Source: Klebsormidium nitens
Taxonomy: Eukaryota; Plantae; Klebsormidiophyceae
Assembly: GCA_000708835.1 (NCBI GenBank)
Contig: DF236954.1
Span: 360,052-423,914, forward strand
DNA: 63,863 nucleotides
Direction of reading: 5' to 3'
The notes beneath the pieces were generated by a model. The model ran no database searches and had not been told where the DNA came from. It saw only the letters and a program-made list of their open reading frames with translations. A program made the position numbers and the translations under genes. Positions 3,792-13,300 of this stretch are shown here, in pieces (positions within the stretch are counted from its first letter, which is position 1; the number at the start of each line of letters is the position of its first letter).

Positions 3792-6700
3792 CTATGTTTG
3801 AGTCGCGATCGACTTGCTTAGGTCTGGTTTCCTGCTGGTAAACTCGGGGAGGTCGTACGACGACTTCTTGTCTTCTGGCTTCTTCTCCTCTACTTTCTTC
3901 TTCTCTGCCTTCTTGGGCTTAAAGTCGTAACCGCCCGGGTGCGGGCCCCAGGCAGTCCCAGCCTTGCCGTGCTGCAATCAAGCAGTACAAGTCTGCTTCA
4001 CTTCCCCCATAACTTCGCGCCAGAAAAGCTTTTAGACATGCCTTCTGCGTGAAATCCTTGCGATCTCTGCAACGTTCACCAAAAACGCAGGAGGCGACCT
4101 GACCCCTTCATAACACATACCTCGACAAAGGTTTTTGCAAGACCAAACTGGGAATCGCGCCTCGTTGTGCAAAAAGCCCACTCCAACATGACCCCAACGA
4201 AGAGCCACAACGACTCTTCGGCGGTCAATTGACATTGTGTGTGTCCGGAGATCCGCATAGTCAAAGTGAGTTCTTCATGAATTTTGACTTGTACGGACGT
4301 CTAGGACGAACTCCTGATGTTGCGCAAGCAGGCGCTGGCACAAAAAAGGTATTAGAACACGCGTGGCGACACGAAAGTTCTCCTTTGAGATTTCCAAAAA
4401 TCTTGTAGCTGAAGAAAGCAGTCAGGATATTTAACCTCTCCGAGCCTTGGCTTCGCGGGTGGCCTCTCCCACGAGAATGGGGACAGGAAACAAGGACTCT
4501 TGTAACATAGAGTTGATTGAAGCCTTGGGAACAGAAAGGAGCCGTTGTGTGCTCTACTCAAGCAACATGTCTGACGTACCTCTTTCGCCTCGGCTGCATT
4601 CACCACTCGATCCCAGGCATTCACGCCACCCCCTTTGCTGAGGGTCATGTGCGTCAGGCCTCGTAATTTGCCCTCAGACTGCACAAGGAAACAAGCCGGG
4701 TATGGAAGTGGGCCTTGAGCTTCGTCGGACGCTTGGCCTGGATGCCAATGACGTTAGGACTTTAAGGAGAGGTTCGTGGACGCAGAATGGAAAGATTTCC
4801 ATAACGGTGTTAACTTTAGGGGGCCACATTCAGTCCTAACATAAGCCTTCCAAAACGGCCACACTTTCAGAAAGCTCGGTCAGTGACCAAAATTGGCCAA
4901 TAGAGGGCATTCTGCAGGGTTTGAAAACGGCAAGACGCGGCGAGCGAAACCTTGTCGTTTCTCCGGTAGACTCATGATTGTGAAGTTGACATCTAAAGGC
5001 GAAACAAAGCGCTCTCCGTTCCGCTCCTGATAACAACCCTCCAACACCATCAAAACCCTCGAGTAAATGAAACATTGTAAGTTTTCAAATCGTCCATGAA
5101 ATAAAGAAAGCTCAAGAGTGATGTTCCAGAACAACTTCAAATCGCCGTGCGGCCTTGGGGGGCCTCCATCGTCCGTCATTGTTTGACACATTTTTTGTTG
5201 TGAGCTGAAGTTGTCACATTGAGAAAAGATGGGCGCTCCGCCAAAAACTACCTCGCCTTGAACAGGCGGCAGGGCGAAACGATAGGAGGTTTCCTATAAA
5301 AGGCCTTTCGAAGGGAGACAACGGGCCAGTTGACTCGTGCCGTCTGAAATAAAGTGAAACGGGTAGCTGGAGCCGGAGCCGGAACTGGAACCGGAAACGG
5401 AACGGGAATCGCACAGAGCTAGACCGACACTCGAATCAAAGCCGAAGTGCCAGCGCTCACCACCGACAGCAGATCGTCCTCATCGCCGTCTGCGGGCGGC
5501 CCGCCCGTGTAGGCGCACTTTTCGGACCGTCCGCAGGGTCGCAAGAACGTGGCATTGATCAGACGTCCGACGTCCTGCAAAGAGATGGAAGGAGAGGGGC
5601 GTGAGGCTCACCTCGAGAGGAGAGAAGCCGTCAGGCGCATTCGTGCCAGAATACTCGCACGGCGCATGCCGCTTGCAGGGGGTTAGGTACAGGCTGCTGA
5701 CGTAAGCGCCCACGTCCTGTGAACGAGGGGAGGGCGCTCATAGAGCTGAAAGACTATGCGACCTTTGATAGCCTCTTCTCAGGTGTCAGATAATGGAGCC
5801 TTGGACTTCTCGGGTCCTGGCTACTTTCAGCGAATTTGATGCGCCACTTCTTAGAATTCTGATCAAGCTTGAACGTAGGAAATCATACTGTGAGCCCTGG
5901 ATTTTAACGGAGCTTCACTCCTGGCTCAACCAGAACGGGACGCAAAGAGTGAAGAAAGGGGTTCGGACCCAGAAACCAGGAGATAGACCTTGAGTCTTGG
6001 ACAAGAACAGCGAACGAACTTGGACCGTTATGATGAAGAGACTTCAAGGTTTCACCCAGTCATCGATATGACCTGGGGGAAACACTGTAAAGTTTCATAC
6101 AACTTCATTGCAACAACATCGAAATCCACACGTCCCTTTCACCATCCGTACAGCTGCAGGTCGAGGATCCGTGAAACGCATAATCCTTGAAGTTAGTCTG
6201 GCAAGAATGGGCCGGGTTGTACTTACATGCTCGTTGATCTCCGTCCTGTCTGACTCGGGCCGTTCGCACCAGTTCTTCAGGGGCTCGGGGTTGAGAACGT
6301 CATGATGCGCGAGCTGCACAGCATGGGAAAAGGGTCGGTCGCTCCAACAGTGTAAGCATGGAAACAAATCGCATAGAGCCTGCAAAATTGCAAATACAAG
6401 GCAAGCAGAGATCCTAACCAACGACTATGTGCAACATAGCCTCGCCGTCTAACCTGGATCCCGGTTTCCAACATTTTAACTTGGGACAGGATCTGTTGAC
6501 GATAGAGACTGAAAAGCTGCTGAAATACTAGAAAGGGGTGACCAACCAAAGTACAGAAGCACGTCTGCACTGCAACATCGGCGTGTTTTCAAGAAGAACA
6601 AAACGAAGAGAACATTGCCGGATCATAGCTCACCTCGACCACTTCCTCCTTCCTTTCGGAGCTGGTTGGCTTCACAACATAGAACCTCTGCACCAACGGA

Positions 6701-9306
6701 TGGGTTCATCAAGCCTTGTCATATTCTGACTAAGCCGTGTATTGCCTGAACTTCATATCCCGTGTAGAACAAGAACCAATTCCCAAAGACAGAGACTGTG
6801 GCCAAGTATACATACGAAAGTCGTCCTCTGAAGCAAAGTCTCTGACCAATTTTTGGTATACGCTGATGCACAAGCCGCCTTGAAGCTGGTTTCGCACACA
6901 GGCGAAACAGTCGTCACAAAGGCTAGATCTACCTTCCGTTTGCAGAGACCGTTGAAGTTGACAAGTACCACTACCATGAGCTTACAAACGGAGGCTCCCG
7001 CAGTCGAGAGCGTTGCTGACCTGTCGGTATGGCATCTCGGGAGTCCTCCAAAACGACTGCTCTAAATACAGCACATGGCCCCCATCTGTCGGCATCCTAA
7101 ACCCAGTGTCGCAGGCACTATACCTGCCGTCCAGAAGAGAACAAGAGTTAGGGCCGTGCTTGCTCACCTGCCGATAGGGATGCTTTGGAAGATTGGCGAG
7201 TGTTTGCTCCTGATACAGCACGGGGGCGTTTTCTAGCTTGAGGCCCGTGTCGCAGGCCGACCATCTGCAGGCAGACCGCTGGGCGTTAGGCAGAAAAAAG
7301 GCGGACAGTTTCAGCATTCCGTGAATATGTGATCTGGAATCGAGTATTTGCCGGATGACATCAATCTCCAAGCAATCAAGGGCAATCAGGGCGTGTTATC
7401 CTGAAGGAAACGCAACACCAAAGTTGGCTCAGCAATCAAGGAGACCTTGAGATGAGAAGGCAGCATCGTACTGGTGACTGACAAGTGTCTTCTTTAAAGA
7501 GCCAAAAATTGGGCCCAGCGAGAACTGCACGCGCAGCGAGAACTGCTCCACTCTAATGCTGCATAAGTTGTTTTCGCACAGTCGAGGACAGCTTTCAGAG
7601 TAACCATTATTCGACCAGTCTCTAAGTTGTAAACTTTTTCCTTCAGGAACATCTCAAGTTTTTGCACCCCATCAAGACTCGTCCACAGAACGTCCCTTGT
7701 CCAGCATTGAAATCATTTCTCAACAATGTGCAGTCCACAGCCTTATGCCTGATGTGACCACTCTGCCCTGCTTGCTTCACCAGACTAGCTTCAAACACTG
7801 TGCAGAGCGGTTTTCAATGCTTGCTTGCTTTGGCTGGTTTTTGAACGCCGTCGCTGGCCAGGTCGTCCAGAATGGTAACCTCTCTGCTCTCACCTGATGG
7901 TCGAAACCCTTCCTTCCACCTGGGATGTACAAAACTGCATAAGAGGAGGAAAGAAAACTCTGTTGAGAACCAGGCCTGTCTCAAAACCCTCACCTGACGT
8001 TGTACCAGTCCTTGGACAGTGCTTGCTCCTCATTGCTCTGCAAAATAAAGGGAGCAAAAAAAGGGGTCAAAGGTGGTTGCGCTGAGATTGGCGCTTACCT
8101 GACGTTGAAGAATGAGTCCTCTCTGTGCAACGCCTGGTCAACATTCACCTGCAGAGGAGGCCGAGACTTCACAGGCCCTTACCCGGCAGCCTAAACCCCA
8201 ACTTAGTCCAAGTGTTCCAAACCACAGATTGTGAGAATGATCCCTTTGCTATTGAATTCCCTTAACTTGTCTAAAGTCAGTTTATCTGAATCGTTCTTCA
8301 GTGTCACCTGAACAGGACAAGTGGTACAGACTATGACAAATGTACCAGAATACTTATGCAAAGTACTTTTCATAATGAGAAAGCAGTCCTTTCATCCAAG
8401 GGTCCGAGCACTGGGAGATCCCACAGGTGAGATGGAAAGAAGGAACTGGAAAGAAATGAAGGTCAATGAAAATGAATTATGTGCGTTGATCAATCTATTA
8501 TATCGAAACAGGGTTCAAAGAGGTTCTTGCTTTTAACCTTTTGTTGCCGTGATTATGAGAAGGTAGTCACACAGATACCTGCCGATGTTGAGACTAGTGC
8601 GGCCTTTTGGATCCCAAGTACGATGTAGCATAGATCTTCTGCAGCTTAGAAAATGATAGAACCAAACTTGCTAGAAACGAATTTTTCAAGCATCCTGCTG
8701 CATAGGGAGAGGGCAACACAGCAATGCAGCAACAAGGATGCGGCGGTCGACTCTGCTTTCAATCCGAAAGCAGATGCAGATGTTTAAAAGCCAGAAGAAA
8801 CATGTCGCTGCAGGATTTATCGTTCCTCAAAACTTGTGGCAAAAGGCGTCAATGCAGAAAATTTCTTTGGAAAACTTTGATACGAAAAGCAATGCACTGG
8901 TGTTTCATCTAGCTTGCAGTGGTCGACCAGCTTCATGATCCACAACGTTAGCACCGAATCCTCTTAGCAACACTTTCACAAGGATCCTCTGAGTAAGCAT
9001 TTGCGCCGTATTCAAGCCATACAGTCCCATATTCACCAAAGAATAAAAGACTACCGGATTTGTCAAACATTTGCTGAGCAGCAGCATTACCTTCTCGCCT
9101 TCCAACAATTTCTTCACAGCCTCGACATGATCTTCTTTGGTTTTCTTCTTTGTCATTCTCTTGTATAGGAACCAGCTCCCCACAGCGACGGCCCCGGCTC
9201 CCACAAGCACCTTCCATTTCTGCTTTGAAGATTCATCCCCTCGGTCAGGCCCCGCCCCAGACGTGTTGGGTCTGCTGGTTGCAGCTTCCGCCTCCACTTG
9301 GGCCAT
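3792..9306 (-). CDS. CRL: CRUMPLED LEAF / CpcT-CpeT (DUF1001) bilin-lyase-like plastid outer-envelope protein
   Basis: Hand-spliced exons 9306-9091, 8148-8099, 7123-7021, 6687-6634, 6313-6227, 5716-5612, 4678-4580, 3971-3792 are all GT-AG and phase-consistent (894 nt, 297 aa). Motifs: N-terminal hydrophobic segment, FFNVR, VLYLEQSFWRTPEMPYRQRFYVVKP, KNWCERP, NAWDR, AWGPHPGGYDFKP. These match recalled CRL motifs (LYLEQAFWRTPQKPFRQR, KNFCDRP, LWDR, VWGPKEGPYEFKP). Confidence 0.9.
5366..5407. repeat. Degenerate hexamer tandem (RNNGGA-type) x7 in the CRL intron downstream of exon 6B
   Basis: gctgga gccgga gccgga actgga accgga aacgga acggga. Confidence 0.7.
5461..5574 (-). other. CRL: CRL alternative exon 6B (114 nt, DVGRLINATFLRPCGRSEKCAYTGGPPADGDEDDLLSV)
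   Basis: tttgcAG acceptor and GTG|gtgagc donor; phase 0/0. Shares DVG-x7-L-x-PC-x-R-x3-C-x-Y-x-G...DG with 6A. Confidence 0.8.
5612..5716 (-). other. CRL: CRL alternative exon 6A (105 nt, DVGAYVSSLYLTPCKRHAPCEYSGTNAPDGFSPLE)
   Basis: cacAG acceptor and GAG|gtgagc donor; phase 0/0. Confidence 0.85.
6454..6519 (-). other. CRL: Candidate CRL alternative exon 4' (66 nt, QLFSLYRQQILSQVKMLETGIQ)
   Basis: tatttcAG acceptor and CAG|gttaga donor; phase 0/0 like exon 4. No obvious sequence similarity to exon 4. Confidence 0.3.
7021..7123 (-). other. CRL: CRL alternative exon 3B (103 nt, YSACDTGFRMPTDGGHVLYLEQSFWRTPEMPYRQ)
   Basis: ggcAG acceptor and CAG|gtcagc donor. This is the more land-plant-CRL-like copy. 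Confidence 0.85.
7168..7264 (-). other. CRL: CRL alternative exon 3A (97 nt, WSACDTGLKLENAPVLYQEQTLANLPKHPYRQ)
   Basis: ctgcAG acceptor and CAG|gtgagc donor. Same phases (2 in, 0 out) as paralogous exon 3B; open frame. Confidence 0.8.
7894..7919 (-). other. CRL: Candidate CRL alternative micro-exon 2' (26 nt, VEGRVSTI+AG)
   Basis: ttttgtacatcccAG|GTG...ATCAG|gtgaga. Same phases (0 in, 2 out) and similar ends (GTG...TCAG) as exon 2. Confidence 0.45.
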
Positions 9307-10317
9307 CTCCCTTCACGTGATTGATTACTCGTCAACGCATGCAGCCAGATACTCTGACCTCAACGTGCTGTCTTGTTTGTAATCTGGAGTTTGGAGCGAG
9401 GAGGCACCCGACCAAAACCCTTCTGCAAGCTTTGGAGTTGCCTTCCGTACAATCAATGTGTGCCTGTAGAAGCTTAGTAGGTATGCCTTGCAATCTGGCA
9501 GTGGGAGGACAGCCTTGGCCCACCCAGGTATGGGGCTAGGAGCAGCTAAGTAGGAACCAAGCGAGGAACCCCCAAACATTGAAGGAACAAAGAACTTCGC
9601 ACAGTTCATGCACAGAAACTTTGCCGCTGCGCAAGTCTGACCAATTGAGAGGGGCGTGACACATCATCCGCAACTTCCGGATTTTGTTTAGAGGCCCCAT
9701 GGTAGCAATTCGTTACGTACCCCTACCTCGCGTTACGCAGCTTTCACTAGCCAATCTCGACTGGCTATACCATCGGTGCTTCTGGCGCTGGCACGTAGCG
9801 CGACTTACCAAGCGCGATCGGTACCGTACCTGGTACGTCTAAAGAGAGTCGGAAGATACTTTAAGTGCACAGGTGGCACGCGGTGGTGCAGTTGTGAGCA
9901 GCCACCTGGCGAATTCACCGCAGCGGATTCTCGCCCAGTCCGAAGTGGTGTCATGGTTTCGCACTTTTCTTTGGCAGGAAGAATTGGCACCAATGGCAGG
10001 AAGAAGGAAGTGTGTGCAGGAAGCTGAAGGAGCTTAGGACGTGTGAGCAGTGCTGGTTTTGCCTGACGAAAAGCAATCTGCAGCGTCTTGAGCAAAGTGA
10101 AGGTGTGTGCAGGAGCGCACGCATTTCATGCGGGAAGGATCACAAATTCTCAAGACAAGCTTGTGCTGAGAGCAGATTTGAACAGTTCAGGAAAAGCTGT
10201 GCAAGGAAAGAGGGCGGTTCCGGGAAGTAATTGGTTGTGCACCAGAAAACGGGCTAGGAACGTCAACCAAAAACTTATAATTCGAAGTTTTTGAAACATA
10301 AACCTAAAAGCAGTTTG

Positions 10318-13300
10318 ATGGTCGATAGCTCTCTCAGTGGTGTTCCCAGCACACCGTCTATGGCTGCAGCTAGTAGCGCTCATATTGGGGCAGGGGTTTT
10401 GCACCATAGGGAGAAGCCAATGTCTCCGAAGGGCCTGGACTACCTCCCTAAGGGGCCCTTTGTTTTCCACGCTGACCCCCCGGCCGACTTGAACAAGAAT
10501 ACGTCGTGGCTGCTGTATCCGGGCATCTGGACCTCGTACGTGCTCATCATTGGCTTTGTGTGGATGTTGTTTGTGAGCCTGGGCGGTGTGCCCTCGGGAC
10601 TGGCGTGGACCTACGTGCACCTTCTGCACTTTGTGGTGAGCTTCAGCGTCAGGAGCGGCTGATCTCAATTGTTATTTTTGGAATTTTGGAAATTGCAACA
10701 AACATTTCCCCTCCTGGTAATTTTTGGTGGCAAATCAGATGTTTTTAAGCTGATGGCATAATGGCTGATAGGACTTCGGTCGAGAATGAATTGGAGGAGC
10801 TTCATGTAATTGCATCATGGAGACGACTCGCTCTTGTGGTACTGTGTGCTGATATTGCCCGAGACTCTTGCATGTTATTGGTGGGCTCACTAAACTAATC
10901 TTTCCAAGGGTTTCCTCATGAGGCACTCAACACCAAGCAACATTTCTTTTCTCTGGATACCGCAGCTCATTTCACTTACGTTCCTGCGCTGGCACGAGCC
11001 TTGTCGATTATGGAGGTCACTCGGATGTTGCCATGGTTGAAGTTTAAGAACCCTAGACTTGTGGGGTCATGTTGCCCCTTGAAGCGTTGGCACTTTTCTG
11101 AGTTAAGGCACCCATTTAATGCTGGAGACATAACACAGTTCTTCCCAATCGGGTGACCCTTGCATAGCGTGATGTGACCAATTGCACCTTCGTATGCTGG
11201 GCTGGTCTCGGTGCCACTGTTTGAGCGGATCACTGTGAATTGGCCACTGTTCGTCTGCTAAAGCCTGTGGCACTCATTAAGTCTGGCACAGATACTCACC
11301 GGCCTTTTATTATTCCGCCATAGCCTTGAGCGACAGAATGTTAAATACTTTTGCAGAGAATTACAAGACTTTAGTTACTCCGATCGCCATGTCCTTCTGG
11401 GTAGACATGGCATGCTTTCAGATCGTGATCATTGATGATTTCACATGGGCACCCCAATGGAACCTAGTCAATTGATAGTTCTCCTGTTCAATTCGCTGAC
11501 AGTTCCTGCAGACCTCGTCTTTGGTGCAGCTGAGTGACTCAGCTTTGGGGTCTTGAGCTATGCTGTGGCTTTGTGTCTTTTCATGAACGTCCGTGGGGTT
11601 TTCCTGTTTGGTTGTTTTCAAAATCTCCGCTCAGCCTGCCTTCTCAGCATGTTGTTAAGTGTCCCCACGGGACTTCCTCGTACCATCTGACATCTTCAGT
11701 CTTTGGTTGTCGTCTTCGCATCCCCTATCATCGCGAGTTGCGTCTGCGTGCCTCTTTCCTTGCCTGTGATGACAATAAGACATGCTCAGAAGTGCCCCTT
11801 TTAAAGTTCCTGGCTGTGATCCTGTGTGAGCAATGAACCAACTAAGGCCTGTGACGGGTTACGCTCTCCTGTCAAAACTCGAGATGCAGTCTCTCACAAG
11901 ACTCTTATGGAAGCTTTTCAGAACGACTATGAAAGCAATTGTCTGACATTGAAACGTACTCGCGCTAAAACATTAGATAGGAAGCTCATTGTCCAATAAA
12001 TCTTCATTGGTCTCAGCGGGCCTCCCTCGTCTAGTCCCCTTAGCTCAGGCCTGCGCATTCTCCTCTTTCTAAGCCCAGGGATTGACTTTTTGGCGTAGCA
12101 TCACCTGCCTTCTCCCCCCTCTTGGTGTGATGCACCCAGAACGAGCCAATTCAACAGGTATATCTGTGCCTCTGTCTTAGTAACAGAAGCCCCCCTAGCC
12201 ACAGCCTCAAGGCACTTGTCCTGCTGAGACACGGCACACCTCTCCTGCTTTCCGGAAGAAAACCCAGCCCTTTCATCTCTTGTGCCCATTGACCCCATCT
12301 CAGTTCTGTGCCCTTCATCCCCCCCTTTATCCCCTCGATATTGCATGTGTACCGCAGCTTTCACCACTCTAATCGTTCTTTCGTCATCACGAATTGCCCA
12401 CACATTCCCAGACACCACATGTGTAAACGAAGGTCAAATTCCTCCTACGGTCCCCAACCCCCCTCCGTTCCCCGAAGCTGCGTAATTGTTCATGTGTCTT
12501 CGCTTGTGTGCAGTCCACACTGCACTGGCTTTCGGATCAAAGCTCCTCTCCTTTCAGAAGATGCTTCTCTCTTCTGTCCTTGCCTGCCGACTCAGCTGCG
12601 AACAGCACGTTCCTCTCGCTAACAGTGTGTACAGACTCCTCCTAGTCGAACGAGTACTTTCTTTTGTTGTACTGAGTTTCACATATTCCCCTCTACTTTC
12701 CAACGTCATTTTAACAAACTTCTGCCCCTCACATAGCAGTTTCCCGACCTCCTCAAACCTTTGCTGACCTCCTGTGCGCTTTGCTTGTTTGCAGATTACT
12801 TTCTACCTGCTCCACTGGAGGAAAGGCTCCCCGTTCGGCGAGGACCAGGGGATCTACGACCGGCTGACCATGTGGGAGCAGATCGACGATGGCGTACAGT
12901 TCACGAGGACCAAGAAGTTCTTCACCGCGGTCCCTGTGGTGCTGTGAGTGGCTTGTTCTTCCTTTTTCGCTCCCTTTTCTTGGTTTTCGTTTATCCTTCC
13001 ATCAAGCCTGAATCACGTGGGATGGAGCAAGGCTCCATCAAGAATGAATCGCGTGGAACCAAGGAAGCATTGATCACGGTCGCTGTGGTGCTTGAAACGC
13101 CTTTTTCGCTTCGTTCTTAGTTCAGTTTCGTGGGTCCCGTTCGTTGTCGCGTTGCTGTGATTGCAAACAAAGAATTGCCCGCATGACGGCATGATGCTGT
13201 CCTCGCTTCTTCTTGCCTTTCTACGTTTCTGGCACTCGGGCGAAGAAGTACATCTCGAAAATTTGATTCTGCTGCCCGGAATCTGTTCGCATTTTGGGCT

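What the first reader, a model, noticed from the sequence alone, without database searches (positions are those of the whole stretch)
7021..7264. Exon pair 3A/3B: 44-nt spacer plus phase incompatibility enforces exclusivity, while retention gives an in-frame tandem product
Seen: the 3A donor (7167) and 3B acceptor (7124) are 44 nt apart, shorter than the other introns resolved here (about 68 nt or more). Splicing 3A (phase 0 out) to 3B (phase 2 in) would frameshift. Both exons complete the upstream Arg codon (AG|A or AG|G). Retaining the 44 nt keeps the frame open (VSKHGPNSCSLLDGR), so a third product with both motifs is possible. Known: a short donor-to-branchpoint distance causing steric exclusion is the alpha-tropomyosin MXE mechanism.
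Basis: partly seen in the sequence, partly recalled or inferred. Interest (0 to 1): 0.8.

Follow-up and report, generated by a model that had tools for sequence, protein, structure and literature searches.

The report
Either-or twin exons in algal CRL gene
A green-alga gene for a chloroplast outer-membrane protein (CRL) has two old look-alike exons 44 bases apart. RNA uses almost only the first, never both, and the suggested third product that keeps the 44 bases is most likely a coincidence of this one genome.

Summary
On the minus strand, exon 3A (7264-7168, 97 nt) and exon 3B (7123-7021, 103 nt) are homologous, share the same splice phase, and are separated by a 44-nt GT..AG spacer. Both encode the same segment of a CRL/CpcT-like protein (PF06206).

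RNA contigs from four studies put 3A in the main mRNA. The 3B acceptor is joined to exon 2C in three runs. Those contigs run unspliced through the 3B donor. No 44-nt splice and no 3B-to-exon-4 joint was found.

Two related taxa keep both exons under strong purifying selection (3A pN 0; 3B pN/pS about 0.05-0.13). They also keep a short spacer (47 and 52 nt) and a non-consensus GTY donor on 3B. So this is a real, old alternative exon pair.

Exclusivity by frame is shown directly. Exclusivity by a steric block is plausible (branch-point-like CTAAC 20 nt after the 3A donor) but unproven, because the genome's minimum intron length could not be measured.

The in-frame "retention" product is not supported. 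Both relatives have a stop in the spacer, and one also shifts frame.

3B is the exon that resembles Arabidopsis CRL, yet it is the minor form. The scan's notes list similar twin exons in other genes of this genome (said to be Klebsormidium nitens).

The parts
7168..7264 (-). Exon 3A (97 nt, 3n+1), the default copy. It encodes W-SACDTG..VLY.EQ..PYRQ.
   Evidence: RNA joints 7264->7894/7994/8099 and 6687->7168 are present in all four runs, and 3A lies in the 1483-nt full-length contig of X19. The peptide is identical in L003 and L001, with 4-9 synonymous and 0 non-synonymous changes.
7124..7167 (-). 44-nt spacer with GT..AG ends between 3A and 3B. It is open in frame in this genome only.
   Evidence: No joint 7168->7123 was listed. 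The depth of bin 6949-7145 equals exactly the share of the contig that ends at 7121, so nothing laid covers 7122-7145. The orthologous spacers are 47 nt (L003) and 52 nt (L001); both have an in-frame stop, and the 52-nt one also shifts frame.
7147..7151 (-). Branch-point-like CTAAC. The A at 7148 is the 20th base of the spacer, counting from the 3A donor G, and lies 24 nt before the 3B acceptor. A pyrimidine tract follows at 7146-7133.
   Evidence: Motif scan. The same motif sits at position 21 in L003, and TTGAC sits at position 24 in L001. The branch point is inferred from the motif and was not mapped.
7021..7123 (-). Exon 3B (103 nt, 3n+1), the minor copy, which resembles canonical CRL.
   Evidence: The joint 7123->7894 (listed as 7121->7892, cut +2) is present in X20, X2 and X1. 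It matches Arabidopsis CRL 6lix residues 86-109 at E 2.7e-5. pN is 0.025-0.06 against pS 0.41-0.55, Fisher p <= 4e-5.
7015..7020 (-). 3B donor gtcagc, with a non-consensus pyrimidine at +3.
   Evidence: L003 has gttagc and L001/L004 have gtcagc. Contigs that carry the 2C->3B joint read straight through it down to 6690.
6688..7020 (-). 333-nt intron after 3B. It is retained in the only RNA contigs that use the 3B acceptor.
   Evidence: X2 record 16 (6690-7121), X1 record 5 and X20 record 25. Read-through stops after 13 codons.
6634..6687 (-). Exon 4 (54 nt), the shared downstream partner.
   Evidence: Joints 6687->7168 and 6313->6634 are present in all four runs.
7894..7934 (-). Exon 2C (41 nt). 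It is the main upstream partner of 3A and the only one seen joined to 3B.
   Evidence: Joints 7264->7894, 7123->7894 and 7934->9091.

Best explanation
3A and 3B are an old tandem duplicate of one coding exon of a CRL (CRUMPLED LEAF / CpcT-like) gene. They are used as mutually exclusive alternatives for the same strand-and-loop segment, which ends in the conserved PYRQ motif.

3A is the default. Once 3A is taken, its donor pairs with the exon 4 acceptor, and 3B goes out with the 480-nt intron.

3B is taken only when the exon 2 donor bypasses the 3A acceptor. Its own weak GTY donor then limits removal of the next intron, so productive 3B mRNA is rare in ordinary cultures.

A message cannot carry both or neither, for two reasons:
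- Shown: both exons are 3n+1, so 'both' or 'none' gives an immediate stop.
- Inferred: the 3B branch site lies only about 20 nt from the 3A donor, inside a 44-nt spacer. U1 on the 3A donor and U2 on the 3B branch site therefore exclude each other, and the spacer cannot be cut out.

The open frame through the 44 nt is an accident of this genome, not a third product.
For: - Anatomy and frames.
- Same Pfam segment for both exons.
- RNA: 3A is in the main mRNA in four runs from four studies. The 2C->3B joint is in three runs. There is no 3A->3B joint, no joint skipping both, and nothing laid over 7122-7145.
- Conservation: 3A has 0 non-synonymous against 4-9 synonymous changes. 3B has 2-5 non-synonymous against 9-12 synonymous changes (Fisher p <= 4e-5). 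Flanking introns do not align.
- Age: third codon positions between 3A and 3B are saturated at 12/32, so the duplication is old and both copies were kept.
- The spacer stays short at 44/47/52 nt, with a CTAAC/TTGAC motif 20-24 nt from the donor.
- The sister pair 6A/6B (105 and 114 nt, both 3n) has a 35-37-nt spacer. It is never joined in RNA, although that product would be in frame.
- The smallest verified Arabidopsis introns are 59 bp (PMC6161759). The steric 5'ss-to-branch threshold is about 50 nt in vertebrates (PMC7969005). C. elegans exclusive exons have 14- and 30-nt spacers (PMC4165533).
- The retention frame is broken in both relatives.
Against: - No mature 3B->exon 4 junction was found in contigs of four runs or among database proteins, so '3B-only mRNA' rests on selection evidence alone.
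- Contigs drop rare forms, and the tool warns that a hole proves nothing.
- The branch point is a motif guess.
- The shortest intron that this alga can splice is unknown. My window-wide estimate failed and no paper gave a figure. Some organisms splice 40-50-nt introns routinely.
- A double-inclusion mRNA would be an NMD target, so its absence does not prove a steric block.
- One earlier scan note says that a similar branch-point idea for another twin-exon gene of this genome was not supported.
Confidence: 0.6

Rival explanations
1. Exclusivity comes only from frame and NMD plus competition between the two acceptors. The 44-nt spacer can be spliced in this alga, but the 3A+3B product has a stop one codon into 3B and is degraded, so it is not seen.
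For: Both exons are 3n+1 and the joined product stops at once. The exon 2 cluster has 59-61-nt spacers and 3n+2 exons and is also strictly either-or, so frame logic is clearly in use in this gene. The minimum intron of the genome is unknown.
Against: 6A/6B are both 3n, so their joint inclusion would be in frame and stable, yet it is not seen with a 37-nt spacer. The spacer has stayed at 44-52 nt in three taxa while the sequence around it changed. In Arabidopsis nothing under 59 bp was verified (PMC6161759).
Confidence: 0.2
2. 3B is no longer a working coding exon. It is the ancestral copy being retired, or a poison exon: using its acceptor leads to a retained intron and an early stop, which only lowers CRL output.
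For: The only RNA contigs with the 2C->3B joint read through the 3B donor into the intron and stop after 13 codons. The donor is non-consensus GTY. No spliced 3B product was found in protein searches.
Against: Substitutions in 3B among three taxa are mostly synonymous: pN 0.025-0.06 against pS 0.41-0.55. This marks selection on the encoded peptide, not on an RNA element. Both splice sites, the branch motif and the pyrimidine tract are intact in all taxa. 3B keeps the canonical CRL sequence.
Confidence: 0.12
3. Retention of the 44 nt gives a functional third isoform that carries both motifs in tandem.
For: In this genome the spacer is open and in frame.
Against: L003's 47-nt spacer has an in-frame TAA. 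L001's 52-nt spacer has an in-frame TGA and shifts frame. An open frame of this kind has about a 20% chance. Nothing laid covers 7122-7145 in four runs. By inference, a doubled strand segment would probably not fit a beta-barrel.
Confidence: 0.03
4. The choice is made by competing RNA base-pairing (docking site and selector sequences, Dscam type).
For: A few imperfect inverted repeats link the introns before 3A and after 3B, for example 6816-6836 with 7772-7792 at 71% complementarity.
Against: Those stretches lie in intron parts that do not align even with the closest relative. The spacer region folds no better than shuffled sequence in all three taxa, with z +0.8 to +2.4.
Confidence: 0.03

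Closest known systems
Alpha-tropomyosin exons 2/3 (steric exclusion between a 5' splice site and a nearby branch point). The mechanism is named from established knowledge; the threshold is as summarised in PMC7969005 and PMC4165533.
   Same: It has two adjacent alternative exons. The branch site of the second lies too near the donor of the first, so the pair cannot be spliced together.
   Different: Here the whole spacer is only 44 nt, with the branch motif at an ordinary 24 nt from the acceptor, rather than a distant branch point in a longer intron. The organism is a streptophyte alga. The branch point is not mapped.
C. elegans let-2 exons 9/10 and egl-15 exons 5A/5B (intervening introns of 30 and 14 nt; PMC4165533)
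   Same: They are homologous tandem exons with a spacer below the organism's minimum intron, and double inclusion is never observed.
   Different: In the worm the limit (about 40 nt) is known from the genome-wide intron size distribution. Here the limit is unknown, and 44-52 nt is less extreme. Here the exons are 3n+1, so frame and NMD act as well.
Vertebrate OGDH exons 4a/4b (branch points 25-41 nt from the 5' splice site; intron size held down over evolution; PMC7969005)
   Same: The distance from donor to branch point is conserved and short, and the intervening intron stays small across species.
   Different: OGDH uses distant branch points and a long pyrimidine tract, and its regulators are known. 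Nothing is known about regulators here.
Arabidopsis CRUMPLED LEAF (CRL; PDB 6lix/6liy), a plastid outer-envelope protein with a CpcT/CpeT lyase-like domain (bioRxiv 10.1101/2021.04.25.441383)
   Same: It is the same protein family, and exon 1 encodes a similar N-terminal hydrophobic anchor. 3B aligns to CRL residues 86-109 and 6A to residues 158-189.
   Different: No alternative exons are reported for plant CRL in the papers I could search. The main algal mRNA uses the divergent copies 3A and 6B, which give no hit to CRL on their own.
Other twin-exon genes noted by this scan in the same genome (DTC carrier, prolyl 4-hydroxylase, NHX antiporter, MATE, CNGC)
   Same: They show tandem homologous exons used either-or. 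This looks like a genome-wide habit.
   Different: Those are unchecked notes on other genes. This gene has three such clusters in one transcript.

Membership tests
Homologous mutually exclusive exon pair (tandem exon duplication) | Adjacent exons are homologous and encode the same protein segment | tested here: met
   They share 16/32 identical residues. Both align to PF06206 positions 31-59 and 37-59. The nucleotide score was reached by 2 of 2000 shuffles.
Homologous mutually exclusive exon pair (tandem exon duplication) | Same splice phase, similar length, own GT/AG sites | tested here: met
   The exons are 97 and 103 nt, both 3n+1, and both have AG acceptors and GT donors.
Homologous mutually exclusive exon pair (tandem exon duplication) | Mature mRNAs carry exactly one of the two | tested here: inconclusive
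   3A-only mRNA is present in four runs. Never both and never neither. The 3B acceptor is used in three runs, but only in contigs that keep the next intron. No 3B->exon 4 joint was found.
Homologous mutually exclusive exon pair (tandem exon duplication) | Both copies kept by purifying selection in relatives | tested here: met
   3A has pN 0 and pS 0.18-0.39. 3B has pN 0.025-0.06 and pS 0.41-0.55. Fisher p <= 4e-5.
Steric-hindrance exclusive exons (tropomyosin / let-2 type) | Spacer, or the distance from donor to branch point, is below what the organism's spliceosome can handle | tested here: inconclusive
   The spacer is 44 nt, with a branch-like CTAAC 20 nt from the donor. The species limit was not obtained. 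The Arabidopsis verified minimum is 59 bp (PMC6161759).
Steric-hindrance exclusive exons (tropomyosin / let-2 type) | The intervening spacer is never excised | tested here: met
   No joint 7168->7123 was found in four runs. This is contig-level evidence only, and the product would be an NMD target.
Steric-hindrance exclusive exons (tropomyosin / let-2 type) | Lengthening the spacer allows double inclusion | not testable with these tools
   This needs a minigene experiment.
Frame/NMD-enforced exclusive exons | Including both or neither exon breaks the frame | tested here: met
   Including both gives a stop after one codon. Including neither gives a stop after five codons.
Frame/NMD-enforced exclusive exons | Aberrant forms accumulate when NMD is blocked | not testable with these tools
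   This needs an experiment.
Docking-site/selector RNA structure (Dscam type) | Conserved complementary intron elements | tested here: not met
   There is no conserved intron sequence beyond about 50 nt from the exons. Only weak inverted repeats were found. The spacer folds no better than shuffles.
CRL / CpcT-CpeT family (PF06206) | Pfam match above the gathering score | tested here: met
   The score is 33.9 bits against a cut-off of 21, for the open frame 6982-7371 that spans both exons.
CRL / CpcT-CpeT family (PF06206) | Similarity to solved plant CRL | tested here: met
   6lix matches 3B at E 2.7e-5 and 6A at E 0.025. 3A and 6B alone give no CRL hit.
CRL / CpcT-CpeT family (PF06206) | N-terminal membrane anchor and outer-envelope location | not tested
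   A hydrophobic stretch is visible in the exon 1 translation. No predictor or experiment was used.

The most novel reading that the evidence does not exclude
One CRL locus in a streptophyte alga encodes two paralogue-like proteins through three clusters of twin exons. One is a canonical CRL (2A?/3B/6A) and the other is a diverged main form (2C/3A/6B). The canonical 3B form would be held back as a precursor with a detained intron behind a conserved weak GTY donor, and released only under some condition or life stage. The 3A/3B choice would be hard-wired by U1/U2 occlusion across a 44-52-nt spacer. This would be a well-documented steric mutually exclusive splicing switch outside animals.
Probability: 0.25. 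Interest if true: 0.6.

Novelty: new member of a known kind. Interest (0 to 1): 0.4.

Why it matters
Mutually exclusive exons and their steric enforcement are textbook in animals but seldom documented in the green lineage. I found no paper on them in Klebsormidium or in CRL.

This pair is old, kept by selection in at least three taxa, and sits in a gene tied to plastid division and protein import in plants. It also shows an odd reversal: the canonical copy is the rare one.

If the short-spacer block holds, it gives a simple rule for how small tandem exon duplications can be tolerated from birth in this genome. It may also help explain a published remark that exon skipping in this alga goes with short exons and, unusually, short introns (PMC6142364).

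As a single exon pair it is an ordinary member of a known class.

Tried and rejected
1. Window-wide estimate of short intron lengths, from strong GT..AG pairs that bridge open frames. It gave 56 real against 32 control candidates with no clear peak, so it was too noisy to set a minimum.
2. Papers for a Klebsormidium minimum intron length. None gave a figure.
3. Protein word searches for a spliced 3B product. With the 3B region of P0003 (length window 109-346 aa), only the two unspliced relatives came back. With the 47-aa 3B read-through there were no candidates.
4. Two metagenome scans for more relatives. Pattern matches appeared but none was confirmed.
5. RNA-structure rival: inverted repeats and folds of the spacer in three taxa gave nothing conserved or stable.
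6. A global alignment of the two exon units with flanks mis-aligned on the shared spacer. Since third positions are saturated, likeness of the flanks cannot be told from splice-signal consensus, so I make no claim about the size of the duplicated unit.
7. The big representative-protein search was not run.
Exons were searched one by one by reference. Joined exons were only translated locally to check frames. For the same reason no isoform structure was predicted.
9. The organism name (Klebsormidium nitens) comes from scan notes. I did not verify it, and the run names were coded.
Full report
**What is there.** The stretch lies in a minus-strand gene that runs from about 9306 to 3794. Its open frame across 6982-7371 matches the CpeT/CpcT family PF06206 at 33.9 bits, against a cut-off of 21. 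It also matches the solved Arabidopsis protein 'Chromophore lyase CRL, chloroplastic' (6lix). CRL is a plastid outer-envelope protein with a short N-terminal part, a membrane anchor and a CpcT-like domain. It is linked to plastid division and to TIC236 (bioRxiv 10.1101/2021.04.25.441383). Exon 1 here also encodes a hydrophobic stretch after a short N-terminus. Scan notes name the genome Klebsormidium nitens; I did not verify this.

**The observation.** Reading the minus strand:
- Exon 3A is 7264-7168 (97 nt), between ..ctgcag| and |gtgagc.
- Exon 3B is 7123-7021 (103 nt), between ..cggcag| and |gtcagc.
- The spacer 7167-7124 is 44 nt.
- Both exons are 3n+1, and both complete an upstream AG to an Arg codon.

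The frame checks gave these results:
- 3A joined to 3B stops after one codon.
- Skipping both exons stops after five codons.
- Keeping the 44 nt leaves an open 15-codon linker.

The two exons are homologous. They share 16 of 32 residues (SACDTG, VLY.EQ, PYRQ). Each alone hits the same profile positions of PF06206 with near-equal scores.

**RNA.** One look at contigs of four runs from four studies was allowed. All joints have GT..AG ends on the gene strand.
- A 1483-nt contig of run X19 gives the main mRNA: exon 1, 2C, 3A, 4, 5, 6B, 7, 8.
- The joints 6687->7168 and 7264->7894 are in all four runs, so 3A is the default.
- A joint from 2C to the 3B acceptor (7123->7894) is in three runs. Its contigs have a low depth figure. 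The tool warns that contig depth cannot rank parts of a gene, so I use this only as 'minor'.
- In each of those three runs the contig runs on unspliced from 7121 to about 6690, through the 3B donor.
- No joint 7021->6687, no joint 7168->7123 and no joint skipping both exons is listed.
- The depth of bin 6949-7145 equals exactly what the contig ending at 7121 contributes: 20.3 x 173/197 = 17.8, and likewise 12.9 and 3.76. So nothing laid covers 7122-7145, although the flanking introns are covered.
- Contigs show presence, not absence, and the tool says a hole proves nothing.

**Relatives.** A word search with the open frame found three proteins called on unspliced DNA of relatives. Their contigs were fetched as L003 (Logan, close), L001/L002 (JGI metagenomes) and L004 (more distant).
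- Only the exons and a few flanking bases align between these loci and the window.
- The 3A peptide is identical in all taxa, with 4-9 synonymous changes and none non-synonymous.
- 3B has 9-12 synonymous and 2-5 non-synonymous changes. The non-synonymous ones are all in the loop after SACDTG. Fisher tests give p <= 4e-5.
- Between 3A and 3B, third codon positions match at only 12 of 32. The duplication is therefore old, and both copies have been kept as protein-coding sequence.

This argues strongly against 3B being a dead relic or a purely RNA-level poison exon.

**The spacer.**

| Taxon | Spacer length | Branch-like motif (position from 3A donor) | Distance to 3B acceptor |
|---|---|---|---|
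| Window | 44 nt | CTAAC, A at 20 | 24 nt |
| L003 | 47 nt | CTAAC, A at 21 | 26 nt |
| L001/L004 | 52 nt | TTGAC, A at 24 | 28 nt |

Each motif is followed by a pyrimidine tract. So the likely 3B branch site sits about 20 nt from the 3A donor.

- In vertebrates a distance from donor to branch point below about 50 nt is taken as the steric limit (PMC7969005).
- In C. elegans, twin exons with 14- and 30-nt spacers, below the worm's roughly 40-nt minimum, are never joined (PMC4165533).
- In Arabidopsis the smallest verified introns are 59 bp, and none of the tested predicted introns of 31-58 bp was verified (PMC6161759).
- Within this same gene, 6A and 6B are both multiples of three (105 and 114 nt) with a 37-nt spacer (35-37 nt in relatives). 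Their joint inclusion would be in frame and stable, yet only either-or joints are seen. This is the best internal hint that very short spacers are not spliced here.

The minimum intron of this genome is still unknown. My window-wide estimate was too noisy, and the papers I could search give no figure. The steric part therefore stays an inference.

**The third product.** The open frame through the 44 nt is not conserved.
- L003 has an in-frame TAA. Its called protein ends ..PYRQVRKARP.
- L001 has an in-frame TGA, and its 52-nt length also shifts the frame.
- Such an open, in-frame spacer has roughly a one-in-five chance, and no RNA supports it.

I regard it as a coincidence.

- The 3B donor has a pyrimidine at +3 in all taxa (gtcagc, gttagc, gtcagc). 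Of the other ten donors of the gene, eight are GTRAG and the other two also carry a purine at +3. This fits the read-through seen in RNA. It suggests that 3B use is limited at two steps: bypass of the 3A acceptor, then a slow donor.
- 3B is the copy that looks like plant CRL, at 17 of 24 identities to residues 86-109. 3A alone finds nothing in the PDB. The same holds one cluster further on: 6A matches CRL 158-189 and 6B does not. The main mRNA thus uses the diverged copies.

**Rivals.**
- Frame and NMD alone could explain the lack of double inclusion. I give this 0.2.
- A retired or poison 3B gets 0.12, because of the selection evidence.
- A structure-based selector has no support. Intron parts do not align between taxa, inverted repeats are weak, and the spacer folds no better than shuffles.

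**Novelty.** Twin exons enforced by a short spacer and by frame are a known kind. I found no report for Klebsormidium or for CRL. One survey remarks that exon skipping in this alga goes with short exons and short introns (PMC6142364). Scan notes list many other twin-exon genes in this genome. One of them says a similar branch-point idea was not supported there. These are leads, not evidence. I class this as a new member of a known kind, of moderate interest.

**Method note.** Exons were searched singly by reference, and joined exons were only translated locally for frame checks.

Noticed in passing
window 7894-8148 (minus strand): This is a three-way either-or cluster: 2A 8148-8099 (50 nt), 2B 8037-7994 (44 nt) and 2C 7934-7894 (41 nt), all 3n+2, with spacers of 61 and 59 nt. 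RNA joints link exon 1 to each and each to 3A. 2C is in all four runs, 2B in two, and 2A in two for the exon 1 joint but only one for the 3A joint. L003 has all three. L001 lacks 2B and has a 74-nt spacer between 2A and 2C.
   Followed up: partly
window 5461-5716 (minus strand): The twin exons are 6A 5716-5612 (105 nt) and 6B 5574-5461 (114 nt). Both are multiples of three, with a 37-nt spacer (37 nt in L003, 35 nt in L001). 6B is in all runs. 6A joints are only in X20. Joint inclusion would be in frame, yet it is not seen.
   Followed up: partly
window 7021-7123 and 5612-5716: The copies that resemble Arabidopsis CRL (3B and 6A) are the minor forms. The main mRNA carries the diverged 3A and 6B, which give no CRL hit alone. 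Whether 3B and 6A are chosen together is unknown. In X20, 6A is far more frequent than 3B.
   Followed up: partly
window 8121-9118 (intron 1): Intron 1 has more RNA contig cover than the other introns. X19, which covers no other intron, has contigs at 8397-8695 and 8714-8971. This could be intron retention, an alternative first exon or a separate transcript.
   Followed up: no
window 7108-7128 (minus strand): A 7-bp hairpin could hold the 3B acceptor AG in the window and in L003, but its stem is broken in L001. It is probably not meaningful.
   Followed up: partly
window 10291-10662 (+ strand): The next gene, on the opposite strand, is ORMDL-like. The orthologous open frame in L001-L003 carries PF04061. 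Gene order is kept in both relatives.
   Followed up: no
L001 vs L003 vs window, whole CRL locus: Only the exons and about 10-50 flanking bases align between taxa, and intron lengths differ. For example, exon 5 to 6A is about 510 nt in the window and L003 but about 2300 nt in L001.
   Followed up: no
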